This document shows positions 5,875 to 60,554 of a stretch of 64,000 nt of DNA, piece after piece. The stretch's first letter is position 1. Each line of letters begins with the position of its first letter. Below the pieces are notes generated by a model. That model was not told the DNA's origin, did not search any database, and saw only the letters and a program-made list of their open reading frames with translations. A program made the position numbers and the translations under genes. Where the stretch lies: the IMG/VR virus record IMGVR_UViG_3300044645_002359, positions 1 to 64,000 of that record. One strand, given 5' to 3'.

Positions 5875-5937
5875 CGGTAAGCCGACCCTTCCGGTTCGGT
5901 TCTCCGGCTTGTTTCTGCCTCGCAGAAACGCTATGAT
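5875..5937 (+). promoter_or_regulatory. Class I repeated promoter
   Basis: cggtaagccg; TTGTTT-17-TATGAT; ATG 5944. Confidence 0.85.
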
Positions 5938-5943
5938 ATTAAC

Positions 5944-6261
5944 ATGGAAATCACCGCTTCGTCATCGCCCCTTTCCCCCGCTGAGATGGTCATGGGTTTC
6001 GTACACCGGGCTCGCTCGTCCAGCTTTGCGGGCGGCTTCTCTGAGCGCGACTTTGCTGCTCATGTGCTTCTCTCCGCAGTTGATCAAGTTGATTTGGATC
6101 AATATTCGCGGGAAGCTTTTCTGGCGATCGCCGATGAATTGAGTCGCTATCGCCCGCTTGATATGGTCGAGGAACTGTCAGCCCGTCTTCGCCGTCGGGA
6201 AGCTAGCTTGCAGGCACGTCGTTTACGTCGTCAGCAGCGTATCGCAGACAGAGTAGAATAA
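5944..6261 (+). CDS. Hypothetical protein (leaderless)
   Basis: ATG 6 nt after -10. Confidence 0.7.
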   Translation: MEITASSSPLSPAEMVMGFVHRARSSSFAGGFSERDFAAHVLLSAVDQVDLDQYSREAFLAIADELSRYRPLDMVEELSARLRRREASLQARRLRRQQRIADRVE

Positions 6262-6492
6262 TACGAGGCTCAACTGGTTTTGAGCCACTTTAACTAGTGC
6301 AACTCTAAACCAACATGACAACCCTGTACGTCTTCAAAAAACCAGATATGTACTTGTACGAACCCTAGGCAAAACACCAGAGGAACCTCTCTTTTCGGTG
6401 ATTGCCAGCGGTCCATGAAAGCCATTAACAAAGAACGGCTCCGTTTATTCTGACCTTAGCGGAGTGAAATACAATCTTAGACTCAAACAACT

Positions 6493-6693
6493 ATGAAAAT
6501 TAAGGCAATCACACCTCTTGGAACTTTTGTCTCTGTAGAGCAACCCTTCACCGAGTCTCAAAGGAAAAGACTCGACGAGATCTTGACAAATAATATAGAA
6601 GACCTTAAGTTCTACACTTGTGTAACTGAGGAGGGTCCGGTATATTTCGGGCTGAATGTAATTCAAAACTCCGTTTTTGTCCTCCTGGACTGA
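6493..6693 (+). CDS. Hypothetical protein
   Basis: ORF track. Confidence 0.6.
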   Translation: MKIKAITPLGTFVSVEQPFTESQRKRLDEILTNNIEDLKFYTCVTEEGPVYFGLNVIQNSVFVLLD

Positions 6694-6724
6694 AATAAGG
6701 GGGCAGTCACCGTGGCCCTTTATC

Positions 6725-6796
6725 GGGAGATTAGCTCAGCGGTAGAGCGCCTGCCCTACAAGCAGGATGTCATCGGTTCAAGCCCGGTATCTCCCA
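6725..6796 (+). tRNA. tRNA-Val(TAC)
   Basis: cctgc-cctacaa-gcagg (C33). Confidence 0.85.
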
Positions 6797-6950
6797 TTTG
6801 CTCTGAATCTAGATGAAGGGCAAAGTTTTCAACCTGTGAAAACCTGGTAATGCGCACCCTGCCAGTGTCTGGCTTTTTCGATAAGAGCCCGTTACTAGCC
6901 TATATCAACGTTAAAATAAGGGTAGAGCGGAGGTCGCGCCTTCGCATCTT

Positions 6951-7022
6951 AGGTATGTAGCCAAGTGGTAAGGCAGCTCACTGTTAATGAGCCCAGCGTA
7001 GGTTCGATCCCTACCATACCTG
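6951..7022 (+). tRNA. tRNA-Asn(GTT)
   Basis: Loop ctgttaa. Confidence 0.9.
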
Positions 7023-7048
7023 TCCCAAGGGCTTAACACCCTCGGCAA

Positions 7049-7119
7049 GCCCCTATAGCTCAGTGGTAGAGTGCCTCTTTGGTAAGGAGGAGACGCGAGT
7101 TCAATTCTCGCTGGGGGCT
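7049..7119 (+). tRNA. tRNA-Thr(GGT)
   Basis: Loop ttggtaa. Confidence 0.85.
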
Positions 7120-7136
7120 TTCGCTTCGCAAAGGTT

Positions 7137-7199
7137 CGGTTAACCGCCCCGAAACGTTCGGTTCTCACCCTTGGCAAGCCCTGGCAAAGACCCTATAGT
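7137..7199 (+). promoter_or_regulatory. Class I repeated promoter
   Basis: cggttaaccg; TTGGCA-17-TATAGT; ATG 7206. Confidence 0.8.
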
Positions 7200-7205
7200 T
7201 AGAGC

Positions 7206-7382
7206 ATGAACGAAGACACCAAGCGGCGGATCCTTGAAACTCTCCAAGATGAGCGGGAGGCTCGGTCCAAGGCCCTTGCCTCGCGAGGTTTCACGAGTGA
7301 GCAAGCCCACGCTTACATCGCGGGATACACGGAATCCGTTCTCAACCGCATCCAAGAGCTTCTCTCTGATTCAATCTTGTGA
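7206..7382 (+). CDS. Hypothetical 58-aa protein (leaderless)
   Basis: MNEDTKRRILETLQ...; read manually. Confidence 0.65.
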   Translation: MNEDTKRRILETLQDEREARSKALASRGFTSEQAHAYIAGYTESVLNRIQELLSDSIL

Positions 7383-7523
7383 CGAAACCCGTGAGCCGAA
7401 ACCAAAGCAGATACCTCAGAGAGGTTAGAGACTTTCCTACGAAAATTGCTAAGCAACTCTGGAAGAAGTTTGCCAGAAGAGCAGTTAGACTCCGCAACAA
7501 GAAAACCTTTGAACGTGAAAACC

Positions 7524-7751
7524 ATGACAAATACCAACGCGACTGACGCCCAAACTGTGATCCAACAAGGTTTGAAGATCAACCAACTTCTGCGAGAAAT
7601 TGATTCCCTTAAGAGTCTGGCAGAGGATATGATCCACGCTCTAAATATGGCCTCGTATGACGTTGAGGATCCTTCCAAGAGCCACCTGCTGGAGGTGAAC
7701 GCCGACCAATTTAGCGATAGGTTCCTGTCGATTATTCGGTCAGAGCCCTGA
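7524..7751 (+). CDS. Hypothetical protein
   Basis: ORF track, internal ATG. Confidence 0.6.
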   Translation: MTNTNATDAQTVIQQGLKINQLLREIDSLKSLAEDMIHALNMASYDVEDPSKSHLLEVNADQFSDRFLSIIRSEP

Positions 7752-7788
7752 GTTTACTTTCCTAAGGCAACCCTATAATAGGTTCAAC

Positions 7789-7861
7789 GTTCCAGTGGCC
7801 AAGTGGTCTAAGGCTGGTGCCTGCAAAGCACCGATCGTCGGTTCGACTCCGACCTGGAACT
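7789..7861 (+). tRNA. tRNA-Cys(GCA)
   Basis: Loop ctgcaaa; U73. Confidence 0.9.
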
Positions 7862-7890
7862 TTGCGTTAGAGTGAAAATTCTAAAGCCAC

Positions 7891-7964
7891 GCTGGCTTAG
7901 CTCAGTTGGATAGAGCAGCTGTTTTGTAAACAGCAGGTCGTCGGTTCGAGTCCGACAGTCAGCT
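7891..7964 (+). tRNA. tRNA-Thr(TGT)
   Basis: gctgt-tttgtaa-acagc. Confidence 0.9.
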
Positions 7965-7981
7965 TTTTAAATCAATCGAAA

Positions 7982-8221
7982 ATGTCAAGGGTAACCCTAA
8001 AGCAGCTGATCAAACAAGGTTTCGAACAAGAACCTCGTGACGGCACCGTGACAATTTTTCGAAACCTGCGGGACGGAAACTTGTATCGCATCTACCTGGC
8101 TTCCCCACGGATGTATACTGGAAGCCGGTTAATTGCTGAGCGCATGTTTTATCCCAACGGAGTCACAAAGCGGATTCCTGAGTCCCATCAGAAAGATTAC
8201 GTTGTTGTTTCCTATCGATAA
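7982..8221 (+). CDS. Hypothetical protein
   Basis: Tiled + strand ORF. Confidence 0.6.
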   Translation: MSRVTLKQLIKQGFEQEPRDGTVTIFRNLRDGNLYRIYLASPRMYTGSRLIAERMFYPNGVTKRIPESHQKDYVVVSYR

Positions 8222-8240
8222 TCATGATTGATATCAACGA

Positions 8241-8474
8241 ATGAAACCCACGAATTCTCCACCTGAACTTTTCCTGCCGCTTGAACGAGCTGTCGTAGCT
8301 GCAGCCTATCAGAACCTTTTGATTGATCGAATCAACGTTCCCCTTGAACAGGGTGAAGAGGAAACCCCTTGGCAAAATTACCTTGAAGAGGCTCGCTACC
8401 TTCTTAAGGAGACTGGGGAAAACTACAAGGGTCAACACGGTCATCCCACTATCAAAGTTTTCACTGAAAATTAA
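8241..8474 (+). CDS. Hypothetical protein
   Basis: Tiled ORF. Confidence 0.6.
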   Translation: MKPTNSPPELFLPLERAVVAAAYQNLLIDRINVPLEQGEEETPWQNYLEEARYLLKETGENYKGQHGHPTIKVFTEN

Positions 8475-8485
8475 GACCCTGAATT

Positions 8486-8776
8486 ATGGAAATTTGGCAA
8501 ACCTACCGAAACGCCGACGACATTGAAGGGCGAGGCCCCATGGTCCCTGACCGGGCATTCCTCCATGAGCACCATGCTGCTGAGTACATTGATGCCCAAC
8601 CGGGCATTATGGGCCGGAGGGGGGAATGGTCCAAGCAAAAGTATGGGGATTGGGAGATGAAGAGGGTGTTTGTGTATGAACACAGCGTCATTGAGCAAGA
8701 ACGCCAATTGGCTGCGCTCAAAGAAACTGCGTTAGCTAAGCTCACTGTGGCGGAAAAAGAGGCTCTGGGACTATGA
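8486..8776 (+). CDS. Hypothetical protein, C-terminal ALAKLT..E.EALGL motif
   Basis: Tiled ORF. Confidence 0.7.
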   Translation: MEIWQTYRNADDIEGRGPMVPDRAFLHEHHAAEYIDAQPGIMGRRGEWSKQKYGDWEMKRVFVYEHSVIEQERQLAALKETALAKLTVAEKEALGL

Positions 8777-8799
8777 CGATCAAGTCAATCTAAAGACAG

Positions 8800-9252
8800 A
8801 TGGGAAAGTATTCTTGCAATGTTGACGGAAAGGTTCTGGACTGGAAGTTCACCAAATCTAAGGCTAGCTCTGGCACCGAAATAACTTGGAACTTCTTTCT
8901 AGGTGAAACGTTTATTGGGCAGATGGTTAAGGCCCGACGCAGCGGGTGGGACCCGTACGTTCACCATACTCGGTGCCCTTTCGGCGGCCTGCAAGGTTTT
9001 GCAACCAGGTACGATGCGGCAGAGTACATGCTGAAAGTTTGCGGTTTCATCAAACACCCGGACCAGCAGTATATCGCAGAGATGATAGACTTGGAGCACA
9101 TGCCTTTCGAGTTTGGGACCTTCAAGGAGTTTATTGACTGCAAACAGAAACTAAAGGTTGCTGAAGAGAAGTTGGCTGCTGCGTATGAAAGGGAAGTTGC
9201 ACTAGAGAGTCAGCTCTCTTGGGCCGAAAACCCTGAACGTATGGGCAACTAA
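8800..9252 (+). CDS. Hypothetical protein
   Basis: Tiled ORF, 150 aa. Confidence 0.7.
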   Translation: MGKYSCNVDGKVLDWKFTKSKASSGTEITWNFFLGETFIGQMVKARRSGWDPYVHHTRCPFGGLQGFATRYDAAEYMLKVCGFIKHPDQQYIAEMIDLEHMPFEFGTFKEFIDCKQKLKVAEEKLAAAYEREVALESQLSWAENPERMGN

Positions 9253-9285
9253 CTCACACCAAATAACACTAACCCTACCAAAAAA

Positions 9286-9576
9286 ATGAACCCTGAAGAA
9301 TTTTGCATTTGGTTAAGAGGCTTCCTAGATGGGGCTGATACTTTATATGGCCTTAGCCTTGATAAATTGAATACACTTGTAGAAAAACTGAACTCGGTCT
9401 CACCCCAGTCAGTTAAAACGGAATTCACCCTCCCTAAGATTACAGAAGACGAAGCTTATCGTATGAAAAAAGCAATTGACGATTACCAATGGCCACCTAA
9501 AAAGAGTGACCCCTGGGCACCTCCGTACAGATTTACCTGTGACAGTCAGGAGCCTGATATTAGATTAAACTGCTGA
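9286..9576 (+). CDS. Hypothetical protein, FCxWLxG family 1
   Basis: MNPEEFCIWLRGF. Confidence 0.7.
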   Translation: MNPEEFCIWLRGFLDGADTLYGLSLDKLNTLVEKLNSVSPQSVKTEFTLPKITEDEAYRMKKAIDDYQWPPKKSDPWAPPYRFTCDSQEPDIRLNC

Positions 9577-9599
9577 TTCCCCCTAAAATTATAACAAAA

Positions 9600-9788
9600 A
9601 TGAGTCAAAACGACTTCCTGTGTTGGCTTCAGGGCTACATCCTAGGTGTAACCGGCACTCAATTATCAGACGAACAAGTTGATCGTATCCATGGTAATCT
9701 GGTAAAAGTCACTTACCCGCCACAACCGGGGCAAACACCTTTTCCTGTTAACGGCCAGAGCCCAACCGGGGAACTTTACCGCTGTTAA
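9600..9788 (+). CDS. Hypothetical protein, FCxWLxG family 2
   Basis: MSQNDFLCWLQGY. Confidence 0.7.
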   Translation: MSQNDFLCWLQGYILGVTGTQLSDEQVDRIHGNLVKVTYPPQPGQTPFPVNGQSPTGELYRC

Positions 9789-9807
9789 TTCCACTTTCAT
9801 AAACACA

Positions 9808-10080
9808 ATGCAATCACGAGACTTTTGCTACTGGCTCCAAGGACTCTTTGAGCTTGGGAACCCTCAGACGCTTACCTCTGAGCAAATCCAAATCATCCGC
9901 AATCACCTCAACATGGTTTTCTACCATGAGATTGACCCTAGTTTCGGGGGACCCGAGGTTCAGGATGCCCTAAACACGCTACACTCGGGGTCTGTCTCAC
10001 TGTCAAACCAAACACAGTCTAGCGAGTTGTTTCACCCCGCCCAAAGACCCCCACGAAATGGTCCCCTCATGAAATGCTGA
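9808..10080 (+). CDS. Hypothetical protein, FCxWLxG family 3
   Basis: MQSRDFCYWLQGL. Confidence 0.7.
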   Translation: MQSRDFCYWLQGLFELGNPQTLTSEQIQIIRNHLNMVFYHEIDPSFGGPEVQDALNTLHSGSVSLSNQTQSSELFHPAQRPPRNGPLMKC

Positions 10081-10314
10081 ATTGCGAGTAACGTGAACTG
10101 ATAAGAAAAATGGACAGCAAGACTCGAGAAGAAATCTCAGCATTGATTGATGGCAAAATTCGTGAGCATGAATTCAAGGTTGGTTGGGTCAGCGGACTCA
10201 TTGGCGTGGCCTTCGTGGTTGGTATAGTCCATGCTATTTGGCTGCTGAAACAGCTTGCCTCGTTTACGGCTGCGAGCTGAAGGTAAAATAACCCTGTAAA
10301 TAAACAGGGAACAA

Positions 10315-10386
10315 GGTTGGATAGTTCAGAGGTAGAACGGCTCTTTCATACGGAGTAAGTCGCAGGTTCGAATCCTGCTCCAGCCA
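10315..10386 (+). tRNA. tRNA-Met/Ile2(CAT)
   Basis: gctct-ttcatac-ggagt. Confidence 0.8.
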
Positions 10387-10393
10387 TTTTACC

Positions 10394-10411
10394 GGGGTAA
10401 GTTTAACTGAG
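10394..10411 (+). promoter_or_regulatory. Putative late promoter GGGTAAGTTTAAYTGAG
   Basis: Also at 11321 and 27022; variants at 45711, 52097 and 22919. Confidence 0.6.
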
Positions 10412-10423
10412 TCCACGAAACAT

Positions 10424-11262
10424 ATGCAGAGTTCTTTTTCAGCTAAAGCTATTGAGACAGTTAACCTTCTCCTGGGTAGTTCAGGCACACTTGACTACAC
10501 ACGTTGTGTAAGACCGGATGGTACCGCCTATGGGACTTCAGGTTCCTGTCGCAAGGGTACGCAGCAAAATAAAGCTGAAATTCGGAAGCTAAAAGCCAAG
10601 ATAAAAGAAGCTGAGGGGGTTATAGAGTACCAGCTGAAAGCAGGCGACCCGGCATACGCAAGTCTCTGGGCCAAGCGATTAGAGGAACACAAAAGAAAAC
10701 TAACCGAACTTGAGGGCAATGAGCCGGTCAAGCCAACTACAAAATCAAACGCTCCAGTCTTAACTGGCGTTGAAAAAAGCGCCTTGGTTAACTATATGAC
10801 CGGGGGCTCCATGGAAACTGGGAATTTGCTGGATATAAACTGGAGGCTCAGGGGATTAGGTGAAGGGCTGATCTCATCTACCGAAAACGAACAAATCAAG
10901 AATCTGGACTCAGCCTTGAAGAAACTACCCGGTAATTCGTCTGGGCAGGAGTTTTATCGGGGTGTATCTTTGGAGCCTGAGCAAGCCAGGAATCTCTTAA
11001 CTTCACTGAAAAGTCAAGGGTCGTGGAAAGACCCAGGTTTTCTTCCTACTCGCGAGACAGAGAACAGGCAGAAGAGTTTGCAGGTCAAGGGGAAGTTTCC
11101 GTCATTTTCATTACGCGGTCCAAAAACTTACGAGATGCCGGTAAATACGCTCCCGAAGAATTTTCGGATCAGCAAGAATCAATCCTCCCCCGGAATACCC
11201 CTTTAAGGGTTACAAACATTAAAAAAGACGGCGAGCTAATTGTGGTCCATCTGGCTGATTGA
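10424..11262 (+). CDS. DFTRC-family protein with C-terminal VIP2/Alt-like ADP-ribosyltransferase; single-base frameshift at 11038-11041
   Basis: YRGV...GFSSYS...DQQESILP once 10424..11206 and 11023..11262 are joined. Confidence 0.75.
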
Positions 11263-11350
11263 GCTTCCCATATCCACAATTAAACTTCCTTGGCTCAGCG
11301 GTTTCAACCTTTGGTGCAAGGGGGTAAGTTTAATTGAGCTCCCTTAACAG

Positions 11351-12127
11351 ATGCAAAGCTCCTTTTCAGTCGATGCCCTAAACAAAGTCGACCGGCTCTT
11401 GGCTGGTGCGGATGCTTTAGACTTCACTCGTTGCGTAAGGCCCAATGGCACAGCCTAGGGGACAGCAGGTCAATGCCGTAAAGGAGTAGAACGTCCAGAA
11501 GAAGAGACGGAGAGGCAAGATCGTGAGAAAAAACAAGTTCTGTATCTGATTGACAAGCGTTACTCCGATGACCCGGAAAGAAAGGCCAAGGTTCTTAACA
11601 GCTTCGAGGCCAACGGAAACTTAGCCGACAAGATTCGAGAGTTGGATGACGGGAACACCGTAATACTTTCAAACCACATGAACATTCATCTGGAGAGAAA
11701 ACTCAATGACATTGACAGTGTATCCCTGACATTAGTAGGCAGAGCAGACCAAAAAGTAAAAGAGATCAGCTTCACTGCCAACGGGGAATTGGATTACGGA
11801 AGCATAGAAGATCCAAAGGATCGCGTCAAAGCTGCTTTAACTGTACGAAAGTTATTTACGATGCTAACAAAGGCTTTGAACCCAGGGGATATGCTCTCTT
11901 GCTACGCCTGGGATGAAGACGGAAGAGAGCAACAAAGAGAAAAAGCCTACAAGAAAATTGGCTTTCAGCCCCAGGCTGACGGTAGTTTGTTAGGAGAAGT
12001 TCAATCGGGTGGCGGTGTTGCCTTCCGAGCTGAACCTGCATTCTCAGAAAGCAAAGGAAGCTGGGTAGACTGGTATGTGGCCCTATTCGGTGAGCTGCCC
12101 CGGAGAAGCTCCTCCAAGGCTCTCTGA
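11351..12127 (+). CDS. DFTRC-family protein with in-frame TAG at 11456
   Basis: MQSSFS...DFTRCVRPNGTA*GTAGQCRKG; open to 12127. Confidence 0.7.
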
Positions 12128-12255
12128 GGCTGCTTAGGCGAAGGGCTACCCTTCCGTGCCCCTCGGCTGAGACCCCGTCCGAGGCTCCTCTAGCCCCCTT
12201 AGAGCGGTGGTGCGTCTTTGCTGAGCAAAGGGTCGGTCTTTACTACGTAAAGGGT

Positions 12256-12318
12256 CGGTAAGCCGCCCTGAACCGTTCGGTTCCCACCCTTGGCCTTCGG
12301 TCACAAAGGTAGTATAGT
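12256..12318 (+). promoter_or_regulatory. Class I repeated promoter
   Basis: cggtaagccg; TTGGCC-17-TATAGT; ATG 12325. Confidence 0.8.
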
Positions 12319-12324
12319 ATTTGT

Positions 12325-12621
12325 ATGAAAAGCGACCTCACTCCCGTCCACTTCGCTGCTATTGAAGAAACGCTAACCCTGATCGGTAGTGGGTTCGAAC
12401 CACGCAGTCTCATGAACAAACTTCTGTTCGATCTTTTTCCGAACGAAGACCAAAAGTTCTTGGATTACTGGGCTGGTTACAGGTTCGTTCACCTAAAAGG
12501 AACTGCTTTTCTGTCGAGTCGAGAATGGATCCTGACAGACATGGTTCGCGAAGTTCTTCAAGGCACTGCCCAAAAGTGGTTTGAAGATTGGCTTCAAGAG
12601 CACGGTCAGGTAGCTGCCTGA
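12325..12621 (+). CDS. Hypothetical protein (leaderless)
   Basis: ATG 6 nt after -10. Confidence 0.7.
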   Translation: MKSDLTPVHFAAIEETLTLIGSGFEPRSLMNKLLFDLFPNEDQKFLDYWAGYRFVHLKGTAFLSSREWILTDMVREVLQGTAQKWFEDWLQEHGQVAA

Positions 12622-12630
12622 TCACAACAA

Positions 12631-12703
12631 ACCGGCATAGTTCAGCGGACAGAACGCGAGCCTTCTAAGCTTGATGTCGGGGGTTCAAATCCCTCTGCCG
12701 GTG
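12631..12703 (+). tRNA. tRNA-Arg(TCT)
   Basis: cgagc-cttctaa-gcttg. Confidence 0.9.
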
Positions 12704-12720
12704 TTTGTCTACTTAATCAA

Positions 12721-13059
12721 ATGTTTCAAGATCGCGAATCCTACCTGCGCGAAGTTGCCGAATGGCAAGCAACCTACGCCCAGCTGAGTGAGCGCCAGCG
12801 CAACCGCAAACTAGAAATCAAGGGCACACAGCGGAACGCCAGTGAAATCCCCGTGTTTTCTTACCTCTGGCCCGTTGAACAGCAAGAGGCGTGGAACCGT
12901 GAATACGGTCGCTCCTACGGCTCCTACACGAGCCGACATTCCGCCTTGCAGCTCACCGTCAACGACGTAGCCCTTCAGGCCCAAGCAATGCTTCGAGCTC
13001 GCTCTGCCATGAAGGCTGAAGCCGGTCGCCAAACAGCCTTGCTTCCCGCTGTTGTCTGA
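12721..13059 (+). CDS. Hypothetical protein
   Basis: ORF track. Confidence 0.7.
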   Translation: MFQDRESYLREVAEWQATYAQLSERQRNRKLEIKGTQRNASEIPVFSYLWPVEQQEAWNREYGRSYGSYTSRHSALQLTVNDVALQAQAMLRARSAMKAEAGRQTALLPAVV

Positions 13060-13073
13060 ACCCTTCGGAGGGG

Positions 13074-13136
13074 CGGTGAACCGAACGAACCGGTTCGGTT
13101 CGCAGCCTTGTTTTCGCCTCGCGAAAACGCTATGAT
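13074..13136 (+). promoter_or_regulatory. Class I repeated promoter
   Basis: cggtgaaccg; TTGTTT-17-TATGAT; ATG 13143. Confidence 0.85.
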
Positions 13137-13142
13137 TATTGT

Positions 13143-13337
13143 ATGAAAACAGCCTACCGAGTCGACGTCATCACTGGAACCAACAAGCGCAACCGGCGTG
13201 AAGTTGTCAATCGAGACGGATTTACCGTTTTCAGTGAAGCCCAGCGTTGGCGAGATTCGGTAGCTCGTGAAAATCCGCAAGCGTTGGTTGTAGTTACCGC
13301 ATACGCTTCTCCAGAGAGCCTACTAATTAGGCTCTGA
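13143..13337 (+). CDS. Hypothetical protein (leaderless)
   Basis: ATG 6 nt after -10. Confidence 0.7.
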   Translation: MKTAYRVDVITGTNKRNRREVVNRDGFTVFSEAQRWRDSVARENPQALVVVTAYASPESLLIRL

Positions 13338-13357
13338 CAGGAACCTCTCAGAAAACA

Positions 13358-13639
13358 ATGAAATCGAAAACCTATTCATTCGCAAAACAACCTGGCCGCA
13401 AGGTTTCTCTTTACGAGGTCGAATGCCTTGAGGATAGGGTGAACACCTTGGAGTCTTGCCTAGAGCACTCAGAACGGCTGAGGAAAGTAGAAAACCTGAG
13501 TGCCGATAACTTTGAGCACTTTCTCATCGAGAATGAGCCCCTGGTTGCGTTCACACCTGAAGGAGAGTCCTTCTTTCCTTGCACCTCCTCGATCTCAAAG
13601 TCAGGAAACGGTGTAGGAAAGTTCGCCCGTCAGTGTTGA
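13358..13639 (+). CDS. Hypothetical protein
   Basis: Tiled ORF. Confidence 0.6.
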   Translation: MKSKTYSFAKQPGRKVSLYEVECLEDRVNTLESCLEHSERLRKVENLSADNFEHFLIENEPLVAFTPEGESFFPCTSSISKSGNGVGKFARQC

Positions 13640-13646
13640 CGGCCAC

Positions 13647-13719
13647 GCTCCTTTAGCTATCTGGTGAAAGCAGCAAACTCATAATTTGCCTCAGACGTGT
13701 TCGATCCACGTAAGGAGCA
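13647..13719 (+). tRNA. tRNA-Ile2/Met(CAT)
   Basis: gcaaa-ctcataa-tttgc. Confidence 0.85.
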
Positions 13720-14102
13720 TTCTAAAACAACGGAGTTACAAATGGATTATAACGATCTCTTAATCGAGATTTTAAACATGACACCGGAACAACGCACCCA
13801 GAAGGTGAAAGTTGCTGATGGCGACCACGGAATGGGTTTCTCTGAATCTGATTGTACAGACATCCGACGGCTTGAAATCTTAAACTGGTGCGGCCCGGCG
13901 CTGTTTCTTAACTAACTTTGATACCAATGCTAACACGAGAGCAAGAAACGTCAGTTATGCGTTTCTACGACGAACTTTCCCTTGATCATAGAGAATCTGT
14001 AAACTTCTTTGTTAACATGGTTTCCAGACTAACTGACTTTGAAGCCATCGAGATTGACACAACCAATAATAAAGTTCACTTAAAGAAACTTTGACTCCAT
14101 AA

Positions 14103-14176
14103 GCCTTGTTAGCTCAGCTGGATAGAGCACATCTTTCCTAAAGATGAGGTCGCAGGTTCAATTCCTGTACAGGGTG
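14103..14176 (+). tRNA. tRNA-Arg(CCT)
   Basis: catct-ttcctaa-agatg. Confidence 0.9.
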
Positions 14177-14237
14177 CTTTTCACAGGTAGGAACACAAAG
14201 GGGGTAGACTCCTCACACAACAAATCACTGAATCAAA

Positions 14238-14600
14238 ATGGAAAAAACAAAGAAACTGGTTAAAGAATACAAGTTGGACCCTGAAGAAACCAGGTACCTT
14301 CGGCCTTTGGAAGAGGACCTTGAAGACCTTCCCACAGACTTAAGTGAACTTGTAAGCCACATTAATTCTCTCATAGATGAAGGTTTTACGACCTTAGACG
14401 TAGACATCTCTGGATGGGAGGGGTCCGGTACAGCTTATCTTTCCTATTTCAAAGAAAGAGAGGAAGCTGACGCAGAATTTCAGGCACGACTGAAAGTTGA
14501 ACAAGAAAGGGAAGAAATAGCAGAAAGACGGAGGGTGACTATTGCGGGACTATCCCAGGAGCAAAGAGAGGCTTTGGGCATTAGTCAATACGCTTCTTAG
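14238..14600 (+). CDS. Hypothetical protein, C-terminal LSQEQREALGI
   Basis: ORF track. Confidence 0.7.
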   Translation: MEKTKKLVKEYKLDPEETRYLRPLEEDLEDLPTDLSELVSHINSLIDEGFTTLDVDISGWEGSGTAYLSYFKEREEADAEFQARLKVEQEREEIAERRRVTIAGLSQEQREALGISQYAS

Positions 14601-14630
14601 AGTTCTATTGAAAACAAAAACAAAGGCAAA

Positions 14631-16162: not shown

Positions 16163-16225
16163 CGGTTACCCGAACCGACCCGTTCGGTTCCCCCCCTTGT
16201 TTCTGCACTGCAGAAACGGTATAGT
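16163..16225 (+). promoter_or_regulatory. Class I repeated promoter
   Basis: cggttacccg; TTGTTT-17-TATAGT; ATG 16232. Confidence 0.85.
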
Positions 16226-18042: not shown

Positions 18043-18098
18043 CCGTCCCGAACCGTTCGGTTCCCACCCTTGTTTCTGCGTTTCAGAAACGCTATAAT
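18036..18098 (+). promoter_or_regulatory. Class I repeated promoter
   Basis: cggttaaccg; TTGTTT-17-TATAAT; ATG 18105. Confidence 0.85.
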
Positions 18099-20693: not shown

Positions 20694-20756
20694 CGGTTAA
20701 CCCTCCCGCCCGGTTCGGTTCTCCGGCTTGTTACTGCAACTTAGAAACGCTAAACT
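20694..20756 (+). promoter_or_regulatory. Class I repeated promoter
   Basis: cggttaaccc; TTGTTA-17-TAAACT; ATG 20763. Confidence 0.75.
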
Positions 20757-22811: not shown

Positions 22812-22874
22812 CGGTCACCCGAACCGAACCGGTCGGTTTGCACCCTTGTTTCTGCAGCGCAGAAACGGTTTAAT
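22812..22874 (+). promoter_or_regulatory. Class I repeated promoter
   Basis: cggtcacccg; TTGTTT-17-TTTAAT; GTG 22881. Confidence 0.75.
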
Positions 22875-23450: not shown

Positions 23451-23513
23451 CGGGTAATCGACCGAAGACTTTCGGCTTGCACCCTTGTCTTTGCAACTCA
23501 AAACTACTATACT
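23451..23513 (+). promoter_or_regulatory. Class I repeated promoter (divergent)
   Basis: TTGTCT-17-TATACT; ATG 23520. Confidence 0.7.
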
Positions 23514-24107: not shown

Positions 24108-24170
24108 CGGTAAACCGAACCGATCCGTTCGGTTCTCACCCTTGTTTCTGCAAGGCAGAAACGCTATGAT
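24108..24170 (+). promoter_or_regulatory. Class I repeated promoter
   Basis: cggtaaaccg; TTGTTT-17-TATGAT; ATG 24177. Confidence 0.85.
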
Positions 24171-33029: not shown

Positions 33030-33092
33030 CGGAAAACCGAACGAAAACCTTCGGTTTTCACCCTTGTTTTCGCTCACCGAAAACGGTATGAT
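33030..33092 (+). promoter_or_regulatory. Class I repeated promoter (ATA at +1)
   Basis: cggaaaaccg; TTGTTT-17-TATGAT. Confidence 0.75.
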
Positions 33093-36904: not shown

Positions 36905-36967
36905 AGGGTAACCGAACGAAAGCCTTCGGTTCACACCCTTGTTTCTACGAGGCAGAAACGCTATACT
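36905..36967 (+). promoter_or_regulatory. Class I repeated promoter
   Basis: TTGTTT-17-TATACT; ATG 36974. Confidence 0.8.
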
Positions 36968-39657: not shown

Positions 39658-39720
39658 CGGTAAACCGCCCTACCCGGCTCGGTTTCCCGGCTTGTTTCTG
39701 CCACGCAGACACGGTATCAT
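39658..39720 (+). promoter_or_regulatory. Class I repeated promoter
   Basis: cggtaaaccg; TTGTTT-17-TATCAT; ATG 39727. Confidence 0.8.
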
Positions 39721-46386: not shown

Positions 46387-46433
46387 AGCCTTCGGCTTCC
46401 ACCCTTGTTTTCGCTGAGCGAAAGCGGTATGAT
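46371..46433 (+). promoter_or_regulatory. Class I repeated promoter
   Basis: cggtaaaccg; TTGTTT-17-TATGAT; ATG 46440. Confidence 0.85.
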
Positions 46434-48706: not shown

Positions 48707-48780
48707 CGGTTAACCGACTTTCTGCGGGGCGGAAAGGTTCGGTTCCCCCCCTTGTTTCTACTGTGCAGAAACGCTATGAT
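48707..48780 (+). promoter_or_regulatory. Class I repeated promoter
   Basis: TTGTTT-17-TATGAT; ATG 48787 opens uORF MNMTRA*. Confidence 0.8.
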
Positions 48781-52667: not shown

Positions 52668-52730
52668 CGGTAAACCGACCAAAAACTTTCGGTTCTCCCC
52701 CTTGTGCCTGCAGCGCAGAGACGCTATAGT
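52668..52730 (+). promoter_or_regulatory. Class I repeated promoter
   Basis: cggtaaaccg; TTGTGC-17-TATAGT; ATG 52737. Confidence 0.85.
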
Positions 52731-54815: not shown

Positions 54816-54877
54816 CGGCTAACCGAACCGAAAGGGGCGGTTCCCTCCCTTGTTTCACTGAGAGAAAACGCTATAGT
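54816..54877 (+). promoter_or_regulatory. Class I repeated promoter
   Basis: cggctaaccg; TTGTTT-16-TATAGT; ATG 54884. Confidence 0.8.
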
Positions 54878-58359: not shown

Positions 58360-58403
58360 TTTAAATAAAGTCAACTTCCCTGGTAGTTCACCGGGGCAAC
58401 AAT

Positions 58404-58520
58404 GGGGAATGGTGCAATGGCAGCACACGTAATTAACGGTTACCTTGGATAAGGTACAGACAGCAATTACAAAAATTCCATTCCACGGACGTGACGGAGG
58501 TTCGATTCCTTCTTCCCCAT
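58404..58520 (+). ncRNA. tRNA body (Gly TCC-like) with CAGCAA hairpin inserted in the anticodon stem
   Basis: D and T arms; gtacctt-ggat-aaggtac-aga-cagcaa; cc-attccac-gg. Confidence 0.7.
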
Positions 58521-58719
58521 TTTCGAAAATCAACTCAAGCAATCAACAATGAAGTCATCTCATCTTTACACTTTGATCGGTGTTGTAGCACTGTGGTTTG
58601 TATTGACCTTGACACTAATTCTCAAGGAAAACTATCAAGGTGCTATCGGAACCGGATTGGCCCTTTTCTTTTCCTCGGTTGGTACGATAGGTGTTGTTGC
58701 CCATTTTGAAGGGAACAGG

Positions 58720-58782
58720 CGGTAAACCGCCCCATGTGGTTCGGTTTGCACCCTTGTTTTCGCACCGCGAAAACGCTATGAT
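58720..58782 (+). promoter_or_regulatory. Class I repeated promoter
   Basis: cggtaaaccg; TTGTTT-17-TATGAT; ATG 58789. Confidence 0.85.
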
Positions 58783-58788
58783 TATAAC

Positions 58789-59232
58789 ATGAACCAAGAG
58801 ACCTACTTCCCTTGCTCTCGCCAGATCGAGATCCTCGATCAGCACGAGAACGCCAACGAGATTCCTCCGTACGTTAATTATCTGGTGCGGTTTGAGAACC
58901 CCTACGGTGGAGAAAGTGTCGGAGTGGTAATTGAGCCCAACTCCGAAGGCGTCGAAGAAGTTTACACTAACCAGAAATTTCCGGTAGCTTCCATGCTTCC
59001 TGGCCAATCGGAAAATGACGAGCTTCTGCTCAACCTTTTCCGCACCTGGGTGTTGACTCCGCCGATGTTTACACAAGTCACTGTTCGTCAACAGACGGAC
59101 AAGTTCTACACCTTGAGTTTTCACAATCAGCACTGGAATTTCCATGCCCGCTCTCGGAACCTCTCGTACATCAAAGGGAAGATTCGGAACCTAGCAAAGT
59201 CCCGTGATGTGAAGGTCACCTGGGAGGTTTGA
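58789..59232 (+). CDS. Hypothetical protein (leaderless)
   Basis: ATG 6 nt after -10. Confidence 0.7.
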   Translation: MNQETYFPCSRQIEILDQHENANEIPPYVNYLVRFENPYGGESVGVVIEPNSEGVEEVYTNQKFPVASMLPGQSENDELLLNLFRTWVLTPPMFTQVTVRQQTDKFYTLSFHNQHWNFHARSRNLSYIKGKIRNLAKSRDVKVTWEV

Positions 59233-59272
59233 CTCCAAGTTTACCTCCCTCCTTGAGGCCTATGCTGTTTTT

Positions 59273-59363
59273 GAGACGAGTCAGCGTTAACTAAAGGATA
59301 ATGCGAGACAGTTAAAAACTTTTTCAGCTAGGTGGTTCAAATCCACTGTCAACACTCATCTTG
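59273..59363 (+). ncRNA. Y-RNA-like module: terminal helix, CAGCG and internal T arm
   Basis: gagacgagt-cagcg...gtgg-ttcaaat-ccac...actcatctt; starts at predicted +1 of the TATGCT promoter. Confidence 0.65.
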
Positions 59364-59377
59364 TTCACAAATAAAAC

Positions 59378-59501
59378 CGAAGAGTAGACAAGTGGTTAGG
59401 CAGCGGTAATGCAAAAAAGATTATCTAGTTTAGGTGATTCAGCAATACCCTAATACGCTAAAAGGAACCGCCATACGCAAGTTCGAATCTTGCCTCTTCG
59501 A
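59378..59501 (+). ncRNA. tRNA body with CAGCAA hairpin inside the anticodon loop
   Basis: cgaagag/ctcttcg; gcggt..accgc encloses gattatcta-gtt-taggtgatt-cagcaa. Confidence 0.7.
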
Positions 59502-59521
59502 TTGTTTTTCTTTGAAAACGT

Positions 59522-59570
59522 AGATAGTTCAGCAATTCACCCTAACTCAATAAGGAAAACAACTATCTTG
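59522..59570 (+). ncRNA. Helix-CAGCAA module, type 1
   Basis: agatagtt-cagcaa...cct-aactcaata-agg...aactatct. Confidence 0.7.
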
Positions 59571-59609
59571 CTGAATCTAGTTTCAACAAACTATTTGCGA
59601 AGCAAATAA

Positions 59610-59727
59610 GGGACCGTAGCTCAACTGGTAGAGCGCTAAATAAAAGTTATCTTGTACAAGATACGTCAGCAATTAAAAAATACCTCGTTTAAAGGAGTGG
59701 TTGCAGGTTCGAGTCCTGCCGGTCCCA
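59610..59727 (+). ncRNA. tRNA body (Lys TTT-like) with CAGCAA hairpin between the D and anticodon arms
   Basis: gggaccg/cggtccc; tatcttg-tac-aagata-cgt-cagcaa; cct-cgtttaa-agg. Confidence 0.7.
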
Positions 59728-59970
59728 TTTACCCCAAGTCTAGCCATGAAAATTTCACGGTTGTTACCCTGCTGGCCTGCACAGTGCTAACTCTCTCGCC
59801 AACGTGGGCAAAATACCAGAGTCTAATCACTGGCGCAAACCCGGAGGAAGTTCAAGAAAATGCCTTCAAGAAAAGTATGAGCTATCCGGTGGGCTCTCTC
59901 AAGTGTAGCCAGCGTTGTTCTCAGTGGTGGCATCACGACTGACTTAGCATCAAGAGTAAAAAAGTTTAAC

Positions 59971-60339
59971 ATGACAAATAGTACAACCCCGTTTCACTTG
60001 ACCCAAAGTCACCTGAAACTGCTGAGGAGAATGCACGTAGGTTGGAGCGTCTGTGAGTTTGGTGCTCCCGAGATAGACCCAAAGAGACCATACGGCAACA
60101 GTTGGGTGCTTGGCGACATACACGAGATTTTGACAGGGGAAGACATAGACGAACTAACTGAATCTCAGAAGGAGGAATACAGGCAGTTACACGAAGAAAC
60201 TCAAACAGCCCTCCAGATTATCCTTTCCATGGGCAAGTTTGAGGAAGGCTTGTACATACGGACTAACCCGTACTCTTCCACCTGGGTACCGTACCCACTC
60301 GCGGGCAGAATCGCGGAAAAATCACAAAACGCTACTTAG
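59971..60339 (+). CDS. Conserved phage hypothetical protein
   Basis: GAPEIDPKRPYGNS....DIHEIL. Confidence 0.75.
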   Translation: MTNSTTPFHLTQSHLKLLRRMHVGWSVCEFGAPEIDPKRPYGNSWVLGDIHEILTGEDIDELTESQKEEYRQLHEETQTALQIILSMGKFEEGLYIRTNPYSSTWVPYPLAGRIAEKSQNAT

Positions 60340-60491
60340 TGGGCCAAATCGTAAGACCTCTTTCAGATTTACACCAGACTCTACCAACGAAGCGGGGACA
60401 AGGGCTGCCTTGAACTGCCAGAAACACCGACTTTTTCGGTTTTTGGGGCGAGAACCGGGGGTCAACCGGCTGAGACAGTTTCCAAGAGGTT

Positions 60492-60554
60492 CGGTTACCC
60501 GAACCGGGTGGTTCGGTTCCCCTCCTTGTTTTTGCAGCGCAAAAACGCTATAGT
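60492..60554 (+). promoter_or_regulatory. Class I repeated promoter
   Basis: cggttacccg; TTGTTT-17-TATAGT; ATG 60561. Confidence 0.85.

What the first reader, a model, noticed from the sequence alone, without database searches (positions are those of the whole stretch)
5911..60546. Covarying palindrome inside the -35/-10 spacer
Most class I spacers hold an inverted repeat overlapping the -35, with compensatory variants. These are gtttctgc-N3-gcagaaac (2654, 3821, 5911, 24144), gttttcgc-N3-gcgaaaac (13110, 58756) and gtttttgc-agc-gcaaaaac (60528). Symmetry is kept while sequence changes, which points to selection on structure (DNA hairpin or cruciform, or an RNA hairpin in read-through transcripts) or a symmetric repressor site.
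Basis: seen in the sequence. Interest (0 to 1): 0.6.

Follow-up and report, generated by a model that had tools for sequence, protein, structure and literature searches.

The report
Palindrome inside cyanophage early promoters
A large lake-water phage that probably infects cyanobacteria reuses one roughly 90-base promoter cassette dozens of times, and most copies hold a 19-base palindrome between the two promoter boxes; the palindrome is real and keeps its symmetry as its sequence changes, but similar promoter-plus-stem-loop cassettes are already known from other phages and what it does remains untested.

Summary
GTTTYYGC-N3-GCRRAAAC occurs 9 times in the window against 0 in shuffles. Every copy sits at -33 to -15 of a sigma-70-type promoter (TTGTTT, 17 bp, TATgAT) whose +1 is the A of an ATG, so the transcripts are predicted to be leaderless. 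16 of 22 window cassettes pair at 7 or 8 of 8 positions.

The window is the left end of a 201-kb lake phage related to Synechococcus phage S-CBWM1. Relatives carry the same cassette. In 65 unique copies found without reference to the spacer, the arms covary, and at least 6 different complementary stems share one dyad centre.

The covariation rests on few independent events. The cassettes are recombining mosaics, the two arms are inherited together, and hairpin-templated mutation can keep arms symmetric without selection. There is no G·T excess, so no RNA signature, and the loops are random, so no N4-type extrusion signal. The dyad was not found in 301 genomes of the Cyanobium family.

Best reading (about 0.35): a promoter-registered operator for a phage-encoded dimeric regulator inside a PeSL-like mobile cassette. 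Rivals are a neutral self-maintaining palindrome, a supercoil-sensitive DNA hairpin and a read-through RNA attenuator. It is a new variant of a known kind.

The parts
5853..5947 (+). One whole cassette as an example. In order: a variable hairpin, dyad A (GGCGG-TAAG-CCG..), dyad B (CCGGTTCGGTTC), CTTG with -35 TTGTTT, the spacer palindrome at 5911-5929, GC, -10 TATGAT, six bases, then ATG at +1 (5944).
2654..2672 (+). Perfect 8-3-8 palindrome GTTTCTGC-TCC-GCAGAAAC. The promoter lies ahead of a 12-codon ORF and tRNA genes.
3821..3839 (+). Perfect palindrome GTTTCTGC-CCC-GCAGAAAC. GTG at +1; lies upstream of tRNA-Leu.
5911..5929 (+). Perfect palindrome GTTTCTGC-CTC-GCAGAAAC. ATG at +1 opens a 105-aa ORF.
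13110..13128 (+). Perfect palindrome of the variant type, GTTTTCGC-CTC-GCGAAAAC.
16199..16217 (+). The cassette with matching flanks in relative L027 reads GGTTTTGC-TCG-GCAAAACC, so two pairs changed on both sides.
22848..22866 (+).
24144..24162 (+). Perfect palindrome GTTTCTGC-AAG-GCAGAAAC. Its promoter lies ahead of an 80-aa ORF and the tmRNA gene.
58756..58774 (+). Perfect palindrome GTTTTCGC-ACC-GCGAAAAC. In relative L030 the orthologous gene sits behind a 24144-type cassette instead.
60528..60546 (+). Perfect palindrome GTTTTTGC-AGC-GCAAAAAC.
18072..18090 (+). Palindrome paired at 7 of 8 (innermost pair C·T).
33066..33084 (+). Palindrome paired at 7 of 8, GTTTTCGC type. +1 is ATA, so this transcript has a leader.
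36941..36959 (+). Palindrome paired at 7 of 8 (A·C at position 7).
39694..39712 (+). Palindrome paired at 7 of 8.
46407..46425 (+). Palindrome paired at 7 of 8 (T·G at position 2).
48754..48772 (+). Palindrome paired at 7 of 8; lies upstream of the RNA ligase gene.
61973..61991 (+). Palindrome paired at 7 of 8. +1 is not a start codon.
52704..52722 (+). Degenerate dyad, paired at 6 of 8.
20730..20748 (+). Degenerate dyad, paired at 5 of 8.
23487..23505 (+). Degenerate dyad, paired at 4 of 8. The matching cassette in relative L049 pairs at 6 of 8.
54852..54870 (+). Degenerate dyad with a 1-nt deletion.
7173..7191 (+). Cassette with the same upstream part, -10 and ATG but no spacer palindrome (3 of 8). 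Its -35 is TTGGCA.
12292..12310 (+). Cassette without a spacer palindrome (3 of 8). Its -35 is TTGGCC.

Best explanation
The palindrome is the dyad-symmetric core of a repeated early-promoter cassette of about 90 bp. The cassette belongs to a freshwater myovirus related to Synechococcus phage S-CBWM1.

The cassette reads, in order: a variable hairpin, dyad A, dyad B, -35 TTGTTT, the 8-3-8 dyad at -33 to -15, -10 TATgAT, six bases, and the A of an ATG at +1. It looks like a host sigma-70-type promoter that produces leaderless mRNAs. It behaves like the PeSL mobile regulatory cassettes of T4-type phages: about 34 copies, all co-oriented with the genes, lying between small genes mostly without known domains, and exchanged by recombination.

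My preferred mechanism for the dyad itself is an operator read in the DNA duplex, in fixed register with the promoter, by a phage-encoded symmetric (dimeric or tetrameric) regulator. That regulator would occlude the -35 and spacer and so shut off or tune the early promoters together. The arm centres are 11 bp apart, about one helical turn, and the three central bases are free.

On this reading the symmetric sequence changes come from two sources. The arms are inherited as one unit when cassettes recombine. Hairpin-templated (quasipalindrome) correction during replication also keeps the arms matched. Neither requires selection for a folded structure.

Shown: the anatomy, repetition, register, covariation and mosaicism, and that the dyad was not found in the 301 Cyanobium-family genomes searched. 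Inferred: the transcription start site, use of the host polymerase, and protein binding.
For: - Register. The dyad sits at the same promoter position in every copy in this phage. Relatives G001, G002 and G004 agree: the dyad centre is at index 9.0 in 44 of 49 stems of at least 6 bp.
- Sequence constraint. Arm positions 1-4, 7-8 and their partners are 83-98% conserved while the loop columns are close to random. 23 of 29 perfect copies share one stem across phages. This is more sequence constraint than pairing alone requires.
- Optional for the promoter. About a quarter of window cassettes lack the dyad yet keep the -35, the -10 and the ATG. The dyad is therefore not needed for promoter function.
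- Host polymerase. No sigma70_r2 match was found in the record and no RNA polymerase domain among about 75 ORFs scanned.
- Phage-side factor. The dyad was found in 1 of 301 Cyanobium-family genomes, against 3 for the reversed control, and that hit is not a cassette. Any binding protein should therefore be phage-encoded.
- Candidate proteins. The phage encodes small symmetric-operator-type DNA binders. One is a 69-aa ribbon-helix-helix protein (G000 96557-96766): a sub-threshold RHH_1 match, homologues named CopG/Arc/MetJ, and an AF2 model whose top matches are Arc-operator, CopG and ParD structures. There is a second RHH-like ORF (82617-82928) and a HigA-like HTH (114149-114415). Both RHH ORFs are present in G001 and G002, which carry the dyad, and absent from S-CBWM1, which lacks it.
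- Neutral routes to symmetry. Mosaic cassettes are shown. Template-switch homogenisation of inverted repeats is described in PMC7202029 and PMC8604942.
Against: - No protein is linked to the site.
- Homologues of the RHH protein at 63-75% identity occur in other cyanophage contigs, including a T7-like one, that show no dyad or cassette within 10 kb.
- The HigA-like gene is missing from the complete genome G001, which does carry perfect dyads. Its own cassette pairs at only 4 of 8.
- A protein operator does not by itself predict compensatory change.
- In G002, other complementary stems occupy the same place with shifted T/A tracts and 4-nt loops: CTTTCC-GNNA-GGAAAG in 8 copies, and GTTTTC-TTCG-GAAAAC. 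One rigid dimer could not read all of these.
- No transcription start site or expression data could be obtained. Only metatranscriptome contigs from a relative were available.
Confidence: 0.35

Rival explanations
1. The palindrome is a neutral, self-maintaining feature. An inverted copy of the T-rich -35-proximal sequence arose once in an ancestral cassette, for example by a template switch. It spreads with the cassette. It stays symmetric because replication hairpins template one arm on the other, while selection acts only on the 5' arm as part of the -35 region. The dyad has no function of its own.
For: - The loops are unconstrained.
- G·T and A·C mismatches are equally common, as expected for plain transitions.
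- Many cassettes carry decayed dyads yet keep every promoter element and a downstream ORF.
- The arms move as one unit in mosaic cassettes.
- Quasipalindrome template switching perfects imperfect repeats (PMC7202029, PMC8604942).
Against: - The 3' arm is conserved about as strongly as the -10 and -35 across phages whose proteins are only 40-90% identical.
- Different stems have been installed at the same dyad centre in G002. That looks like repeated selection for a dyad at this spot.
- The 5' arm, TTGTTTCTGC, is not the sigma-70 -35 consensus beyond TTG. Its own conservation therefore also needs an explanation.
Confidence: 0.22
2. The dyad acts as a supercoil-sensitive DNA hairpin or cruciform. 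At high negative superhelicity the 8-bp/3-nt dyad extrudes, removes part of the -35 and spacer from the duplex, and switches the early promoters off (or recruits a hairpin-binding factor). This would couple early transcription to DNA topology, which the phage's own type II topoisomerase could alter.
For: - Complementarity is kept through changes of sequence, register and loop length, and the dyad centre is fixed relative to the promoter.
- Neither strand's wobble pair is favoured, as expected if both strands must pair.
- The closing pair is always C..G.
- Single-strand DNA fold energy is -6.7 to -7.7 kcal/mol on either strand.
- There is experimental precedent. The N4 P1 hairpin placed between the -35 and -10 of rrnB abolished the promoter, and novobiocin restored it (PMC4496689).
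- The phage encodes a GyrA/ParC-like subunit.
Against: - Extrusion of such short hairpins at physiological superhelicity needed a G-N-A loop in N4. Here G-N-A occurs in 1 of 29 perfect copies on the plus strand and 2 of 29 on the minus strand.
- The stem is A/T-rich.
- Near-invariance of stem positions 1-4 and 7-8 is not required by structure alone.
Confidence: 0.15
3. The dyad acts as an RNA hairpin in read-through transcripts, as proposed for PeSLs. Polymerases arriving from upstream transcribe the dyad, and the stem-loop attenuates, terminates or marks a processing site. Each leaderless gene would then be expressed only from its own promoter.
For: - PeSL stem-loops can lie between the -35 and -10, and one was shown to terminate transcription (PMC2839356).
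- The hairpin appears in the minimum-energy or centroid RNA fold of all 7 folded cassettes whose dyad is perfect.
- An internal AUG without a Shine-Dalgarno sequence would gain nothing from read-through.
- Some G002 variants carry TTCG, GAA or G-N-N-A loops on the sense strand.
Against: - There is no G·U excess: 28 G·T against 26 A·C, and 10 against 20 in the larger set.
- The RNA stem is weak, at -5.9 to -8.6 kcal/mol. It is followed by GCUAUGAU, not a U-tract.
- The terminator scan does not flag the dyad, and terminator-like sites are not enriched (32 against 24 ± 5, and 31 against 25 ± 5).
- Stronger GC-rich hairpins already sit upstream in the same cassette.
- An RNA role does not require nucleotide-exact register with the promoter.
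Confidence: 0.15

Closest known systems
PeSLs (promoter-early stem-loop cassettes) of T4-type coliphages RB49 and phi1 (Arbiol et al. 2010, PMC2839356)
   Same: - A conserved intergenic cassette of about 100 bp that combines a sigma-70-like early promoter with a stem-loop.
- In some subclasses the stem-loop lies between the -35 and -10 or overlaps the -35.
- Many copies lie among small genes of unknown function.
- Recombination between copies shuffles genes, with crossovers near the -10. The same is seen here for L030 against window 58756 and 24144.
   Different: - There is no sequence homology and the phage lineage and host are different.
- Here the stem-loop position is fixed rather than falling into five subclasses.
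- The stem is A/T-rich (GTTTCTGC), not poly-G/poly-C.
- The cassette has three dyads.
- Transcripts are predicted to be leaderless.
- Terminator activity and mini-circles have not been tested.
Early promoter hairpins of coliphage N4 virion RNA polymerase (review PMC4496689)
   Same: - A small inverted repeat with a 3-nt loop and a C:G closing pair lies inside a phage early promoter.
- Some stem bases are conserved while others need only pair.
- The N4 hairpin, placed in a sigma-70 promoter spacer, acts as a gyrase-dependent off switch.
   Different: - N4 hairpins are centred at about -11, carry G-N-A loops, number three per genome and are read by a 3,500-aa injected polymerase.
- Here the dyad centre is about -24, it is flanked by -35 and -10 hexamers, the loops are random, there are about 34 copies, and no such polymerase gene was found.
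Ribbon-helix-helix operators at promoters (P22 Arc at Pant; CopG of pMV158). The structures appear as top fold matches; their promoter placement is from my own knowledge.
   Same: - A short dyad-symmetric operator lies between or over the -35 and -10, with half-sites about one helical turn apart.
- The phage encodes Arc/CopG-like proteins.
   Different: - Those operators are single autoregulatory sites, not a site repeated at dozens of promoters.
- No binding has been shown here.
- The candidate protein family also occurs in phages that lack the dyad.
Promoter cassette of Synechococcus phage S-CBWM1, the nearest cultured relative
   Same: - Repeated intergenic cassettes share dyad A (GGGGCGG-TAAA-CCGCCC) next to a -35 and a 17-bp spacer.
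- The genome layout is the same, with a tRNA array, then topoisomerase and polymerase genes.
   Different: - In S-CBWM1 dyad A abuts the -35 (TTTACA) directly.
- The spacers show no shared dyad of this type. The cassette model and a leaderless-promoter pattern found nothing in its first 50 kb.
- The -10 is TAAGCT or TAAAGT, and there is a transcribed CTGAC..GTCAG dyad and a leader.
Quasipalindrome template-switch mutagenesis (PMC7202029, PMC8604942)
   Same: It gives a non-selective route to matched changes in both arms, including matched indels as in G000 68255.
   Different: It is a mutational process, not a function. It was not observed directly here, and no loop inversions were seen.

Membership tests
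PeSL-type mobile promoter/stem-loop cassette | Sigma-70-like early promoter consensus inside the repeat | tested here: met
   TTG-N3, a 17-bp spacer and TATNAT in 22 window cassettes, with A at the expected +1. This is sequence evidence only; no transcription start site data exist.
PeSL-type mobile promoter/stem-loop cassette | Stem-loop-forming sequence within or next to the promoter | tested here: met
   An 8-bp/3-nt dyad lies at -33 to -15, with two further dyads upstream.
PeSL-type mobile promoter/stem-loop cassette | Many intergenic copies among small genes of unknown function | tested here: met
   About 34 plus-strand copies lie between 2.6 and 114 kb. Most neighbouring ORFs have no Pfam match.
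PeSL-type mobile promoter/stem-loop cassette | Recombination between copies reshuffles neighbouring genes | tested here: met
   In L030 the gene is 91.5% identical to window 58789, but the cassette is 86% identical to the 24144 copy and 73% to the 58756 copy, and the upstream sequence is unrelated. G000 110950 and L017 share their upstream half only. Assemblies join different copies.
PeSL-type mobile promoter/stem-loop cassette | The stem-loop terminates transcription | tested here: inconclusive
   A consensus terminator scan does not flag the spacer dyad, and it has no U-tract. Function cannot be tested with these tools.
PeSL-type mobile promoter/stem-loop cassette | Sequence homology to RB49/phi1 PeSLs | not tested
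   Only the description in PMC2839356 was compared. Those stems are GGGG..CCCC while these are GTTTCTGC, so the relationship is treated as analogy.
N4-type promoter hairpin | Stem of 5-7 bp with a 3-nt loop | tested here: met
   The stem is 8 bp and the loop 3 nt.
N4-type promoter hairpin | C:G closing pair plus a G-N-A loop, needed for extrusion | tested here: not met
   The closing pair is present. G-N-A loops occur in 1 of 29 copies on the plus strand and 2 of 29 on the minus strand.
N4-type promoter hairpin | Hairpin centred about -11 with no -35/-10 hexamers, read by a giant virion RNA polymerase | tested here: not met
   The centre is about -24 and is flanked by hexamers. The largest ORFs are tail-fibre, collar, sheath or tape-measure-like. 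The record is 71% complete.
MerR-type promoter | Over-long 19-20 bp spacer holding the dyad, plus a MerR-family gene | tested here: not met
   The spacer is 17 bp. No MerR_1 match was found in six frames.
Repressor operator (Arc, CopG or Cro type) | Dyad-symmetric site overlapping the core promoter, half-sites about one helical turn apart | tested here: met
   The layout is 8-3-8, the arm centres are 11 bp apart, and the site spans -33 to -15.
Repressor operator (Arc, CopG or Cro type) | A cognate DNA-binding protein that co-occurs with the site | tested here: inconclusive
   Candidate RHH and HigA-like proteins exist. The HigA-like gene is absent from the complete genome G001. RHH homologues occur without the dyad.
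Host transcription-factor regulon | The same dyad present in host genomes | tested here: not met
   The dyad was found in 1 of 301 Cyanobium-family genomes searched, against 3 of 301 for the reversed control, and that hit is not a cassette.
Intrinsic terminator | G+C-rich stem followed directly by a U-tract | tested here: not met
   The stem has 3 G·C pairs of 8, an RNA fold energy of -5.9 to -8.6 kcal/mol, and the tail GCUAUGAU.
Curated RNA family (Rfam) | A match at gathering score | tested here: not met
   Only tRNAs and a permuted tmRNA matched in the window.

The most novel reading that the evidence does not exclude
The dyad is a natural, genome-wide version of the hairpin-in-the-spacer switch. 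On this reading about 34 (in G002 up to about 80) sigma-70-type early promoters each hold a small extrudable DNA hairpin that overlaps the -35. Rising negative superhelicity, or a hairpin-binding factor, would then turn a whole temporal class of leaderless phage genes off together without a classical repressor.
Probability: 0.15. Interest if true: 0.8.

Novelty: new variant of a known kind. Interest (0 to 1): 0.45.

Why it matters
This cassette family is compact and highly repeated, and it offers a natural series of promoters that differ mainly in one dyad. Copies exist that are perfect, off by one pair, compensated, or decayed. That makes an old question directly testable: do short palindromes in promoter spacers act as protein sites, as DNA structures, or as nothing?

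The family also extends the 'mobile regulatory cassette' idea from T4-type coliphages to large freshwater cyanophages. It predicts widespread leaderless expression in a cyanophage, which would matter for annotating such genomes and for building cyanobacterial expression parts.

Finally, it is a caution. Covariation in a palindrome whose copies recombine is weak evidence for a selected structure.

Tried and rejected
- **RNAalifold.** The consensus fold over all 65 cassettes found only 2 pairs, because the decayed copies break the consensus. I used explicit pair counts instead.
- **Dyad B.** My first register was wrong because of a gap column, so its numbers should be ignored.
- **Reads.** The one RNA run is stored as contigs from a relative about 90% identical. 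No starts, ends or strand information came from it.
- **Host-factor idea.** Rejected, because the dyad was not found in the host-family genomes searched.
- **MerR idea.** Rejected.
- **Phage sigma factor or own polymerase.** Not found.
- **HigA-like HTH as the binder.** Weakened by its absence from the complete genome G001.
- **RHH protein as the binder.** The fold is supported, but the co-occurrence test failed.
- **Terminator reading of dyad B plus the T-rich arm.** It holds for a few copies (13076-13103, and some G002 copies) but not in general.
- **Orthologue-by-orthologue count of compensatory events.** Only one clean case was found (window 16199 against L027). Its loop changed completely as well, so it may be a module swap rather than in-place evolution.
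- **DNA search of the phage collection.** It matched only tRNA genes.

Full report
**Observation**

The pattern GTTTYYGC-N3-GCRRAAAC has 9 exact matches in the window and none in 100 dinucleotide-preserving shuffles. Two more perfect copies lie at 16199 and 22848. The rest of the 201,260-bp record holds no further exact copy.

All nine copies sit in the same longer repeat. A profile built from them finds about 34 copies, all on the plus strand, between 2.6 and 114 kb, plus one weak copy at 199 kb.

**Anatomy of the cassette**

Each cassette fills an intergenic gap of about 85-100 bp. It reads, in order:
- a variable hairpin;
- dyad A, centred on CGGTWAACCG;
- dyad B (GAACCG..CGGTTC or GGAAGCC-TTC-GGCTTCC);
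- CCCTTG;
- the 8-3-8 dyad;
- GC or GG;
- TATgAT, six bases, then ATG.

If TTGTTT is taken as the -35, the spacer is 17 bp, the -10 is TATGAT, TATAGT or TATAAT, and the A of the ATG falls seven bases after the -10. That is the expected start site. The dyad therefore spans -33 to -15.

In 20 of 28 cassettes of this genome, the ATG or GTG at +1 opens an ORF of 45-243 codons. In one of them an AAA_33 kinase domain begins at residue 8, which leaves no room for an upstream start. The transcripts are thus predicted to be leaderless. This is inferred from sequence only.

In the window, 9 of 22 cassettes pair at 8 of 8 arm positions, 7 at 7 of 8, one at 6 of 8 and five at 5 or fewer.

**Source organism**

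The window is the first 64 kb of an IMG/VR virus record estimated to be 71% complete.
- It encodes a Mu-like portal, a sheath-like protein, baseplate and tail-fibre proteins, a family A DNA polymerase and a GyrA/ParC-like subunit.
- Its large terminase is 58% identical to that of Synechococcus phage S-CBWM1.
- Its EF-Ts gene is closest to cyanobacterial EF-Ts, at 54-59% identity; the top 16 hits include 15 labelled cyanobacterial and one unlabelled MAG.
- It carries a permuted tmRNA and a DUF1517 protein.
- Runs that hold the sequence are lake and freshwater metagenomes.

No sigma-70 region 2 match exists in six frames, and no RNA polymerase domain was seen among about 75 ORFs scanned. Use of the host polymerase is the simplest reading.

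**Relatives and covariation**

A scan of viral contigs used a pattern that leaves the spacer unspecified (TTCGGYT-N5-CCTTG-N20-TATNNT). It recovered the cassette in about 15 further contigs. Whole-record searches found 15 copies in a complete 279-kb genome (G001), 84 matches on both strands in a 98%-complete 277-kb genome (G002), and more in G004 and G005.

On 65 unique cassettes (alignment A1):
- The spacer helix is paired in 85.9% of cells.
- Arm position 5 is C·G 35 and U·A 20. Position 6 is U·A 41 and C·G 11. Position 2 is U·A 42, G·C 3 and C·G 1.
- No column shuffle out of 500 reaches the observed covariation, and versions of the structure slid by 1-3 columns fall to about 40-49% paired.
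- Fisher tests on positions 5 and 6 give p of about 5e-9 and 4e-8. These ignore the relatedness of the copies.

Perfect or near-perfect stems of different sequence occupy the same place:
- GTTTCTGC, GTTTTCGC, GTTTTTGC, GGTTTTGC, GTTTTCTC and GTTTTTCC;
- two stems with 4-nt loops, CTTTCC-GNNA-GGAAAG and GTTTTC-TTCG-GAAAAC.

One copy (G000 68255) has lost one base from each arm and still pairs. In a test that allows any register, 49 of 124 spacers hold a stem of at least 6 bp, against 0.7 expected. The dyad centre is unchanged in 44 of those 49.

**How much the covariation proves**

It proves less than it seems to.
- The cassettes are mosaics. In L030 the gene orthologous to window 58789 (91.5% identical) sits behind a cassette that matches the 24144 copy (86%) rather than the 58756 copy (73%). 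The upstream DNA is unrelated, and the crossover lies in the shared -10 region.
- G000 110950 and L017 share the upstream half of the cassette but differ from the -35 onward.
- By flank similarity, the nearest neighbour of seven of nine GTTTTCGC-type copies is a GTTTCTGC-type copy.
- Because the arms are 3 nt apart, they are inherited as one block. The counts therefore reflect perhaps three to six founding double changes.
- Template switching at quasipalindromes converts a single-arm change into a matched pair without any selection (PMC7202029, PMC8604942).
- Positions 1-4 and 7-8 hardly vary, and 23 of 29 perfect copies share one stem across phages. That is not what a purely structural constraint produces.

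**Tests between the readings**

*RNA hairpin*
- G·T and A·C mismatches number 28 and 26 in the 65 cassettes, and 10 and 20 in 69 near-perfect dyads of the larger set. There is no tolerance for G·U.
- The RNA stem is worth only -5.9 to -8.6 kcal/mol and lacks a U-tract.
- A terminator scan neither flags the dyad nor finds an excess of terminators.
- Stronger GC-rich hairpins already lie upstream in the cassette.

*DNA hairpin*
- Both strands fold at about -7 kcal/mol, and the closing pair is C..G.
- The G-N-A loop that lets N4 hairpins extrude at physiological superhelicity (PMC4496689) is not enriched: 1 and 2 of 29 copies on the two strands.

*Host factor*
- The dyad was found in 1 of 301 Cyanobium-family genomes, against 3 for a reversed control, and that hit is not a cassette.

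*Phage factor*
- Six-frame family searches found a weak HTH_3 match. It is a HigA-like 88-aa protein just after the last cassette.
- It is present in G002 but absent from the complete genome G001.
- Two ribbon-helix-helix-like ORFs also turned up.
- For the 69-aa one, homologues are named CopG/Arc/MetJ. An AF2 model (pLDDT 83) has Arc-operator, CopG, CopA and ParD structures among its top matches, with TM-scores of about 0.8 when normalised by target length.
- Both RHH ORFs occur in G001 and G002 but not in S-CBWM1.
- However, homologues at 63-75% identity also sit in other cyanophage contigs that show no dyad within 10 kb.
- No binding protein can therefore be named.

**Comparison with what is known**

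- **PeSLs.** The closest described system is the PeSL of T4-type phages RB49 and phi1. It is a conserved cassette of a sigma-70-like early promoter plus a stem-loop. In some subclasses the stem-loop lies between the -35 and -10 or over the -35. It terminates transcription and mediates gene shuffling by recombination, with crossovers near the -10 (PMC2839356). The present cassette meets every sequence-level criterion. It differs in lineage, in the fixed position and A/T-rich sequence of the stem, in having three dyads, and in its leaderless design.
- **N4.** N4 promoter hairpins share the small stem and 3-nt loop but none of the other defining features.
- **MerR.** MerR-type promoters are excluded by the 17-bp spacer and the lack of a MerR gene.
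- **S-CBWM1.** This relative has a related cassette that shares dyad A, but its spacers show no shared dyad of this type and its transcripts have leaders.

**Verdict**

The element is a new variant of a known kind, a PeSL-like mobile early-promoter cassette. It is found in freshwater cyanophages, and its dyad is locked to the promoter geometry.

The mechanism of the dyad is open. My estimates are:
- a promoter-registered operator for a phage-encoded symmetric regulator, 0.35;
- a neutral self-maintaining palindrome, 0.22;
- a supercoil-sensitive DNA hairpin, 0.15;
- a read-through RNA attenuator, 0.15;
- something else, the remainder.

Reporter series with disrupted and restored arms, end mapping and topoisomer probing would decide among these.

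Noticed in passing
window 2687-62006 (the +1 positions of the cassettes); also G000 71000-71461: The ATG (or GTG) lies exactly seven bases after the -10 in most cassettes, so the mRNAs are predicted to be leaderless. 20 of 28 open ORFs of 45-243 codons. One kinase has its domain starting at residue 8, which confirms the start. Even cassettes ahead of tRNA genes keep ATGGAA or GTG at +1.
   Followed up: partly
window, about 60 to 15 bases upstream of each palindrome (for example 5875-5905, 24105-24140); L084 11170-11185: Two further dyads lie upstream of the -35. Dyad A is centred on CGGTWAACCG, and its flanks read GGGCGG..CCGCCC or GTTCGG..CCGAAC. Dyad B is GAACCG..CGGTTC or GGAAGCC..GGCTTCC. 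In some copies the middle segment can pair either way. Dyad A is also conserved in S-CBWM1, where it directly abuts the -35.
   Followed up: partly
L221-L229 (G002), for example G002 155967, 75169, 90014, 85095: The 277-kb relative has about 70-84 cassettes on both strands and other spacer dyad classes: CTC-GAA-GAG, CTTTCC-GNNA-GGAAAG (8 copies) and GTTTTC-TTCG-GAAAAC. The loops are of the especially stable kinds on the sense strand only.
   Followed up: partly
window 18-17552, 24423-24732, 21475-22083: The phage carries a set of translation genes: 35 tRNA genes, a permuted tmRNA (tag ANKIVKFERTAVAV) and its own EF-Ts, whose closest relatives are cyanobacterial (54-59% identity).
   Followed up: partly
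window 2165-2237 and 4478-4549: ARAGORN calls two tRNA-like genes with irregular anticodon loops, one with a 4-base 'ttcg' anticodon and one with a 2-base 'ac'. They may be pseudo-tRNAs or unusual decoders.
   Followed up: no
window 58403-58520 and 59610-59727: Two Rfam tRNA matches of 118 nt that ARAGORN did not call. They may be tRNA genes with insertions or introns.
   Followed up: no
window 48816-49940, 16232-16624; G000 71000-71461: An RNA ligase (PHA02142 OB-fold plus RNA_ligase domains), a domain resembling a tRNA-ligase phosphodiesterase, and an AAA_33 kinase. Together these look like a tRNA repair set.
   Followed up: no
window 10424-11206; G000 77009-78058: A weak, sub-threshold match to an ADP-ribosyltransferase domain, and a clear ADP-ribosylglycohydrolase. 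ADP-ribosylation of host proteins, perhaps the polymerase, might bear on how these promoters are used.
   Followed up: no
window 34468-35970 and about 34140-34180: A nicotinamide/nicotinate phosphoribosyltransferase gene. Nearby, a 42-base stretch is 95% identical to a ribose-phosphate pyrophosphokinase gene of Cronobacter phage GAP52. These suggest NAD salvage genes.
   Followed up: no
G000 114149-114415 (L003 10149-10415); G000 96557-96766; G000 82617-82928: Small DNA-binding candidates. One is a HigA-like HTH protein expressed from the last cassette, just before the topoisomerase gene. The other two are ribbon-helix-helix (Arc/CopG-like) ORFs.
   Followed up: yes
G000 150948-152711 and 152730-154127 (L005 6948-8711, 8730-10127): Two adjacent ORFs both match large terminase profiles (E 2e-80 and 7e-26).
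   Followed up: no
G000 80726-82213 (L001 16726-18213): A 495-aa protein with a Tet/JBP-type 2-oxoglutarate/Fe dioxygenase domain lies next to SNF2-like genes. This raises the possibility of DNA base modification.
   Followed up: no
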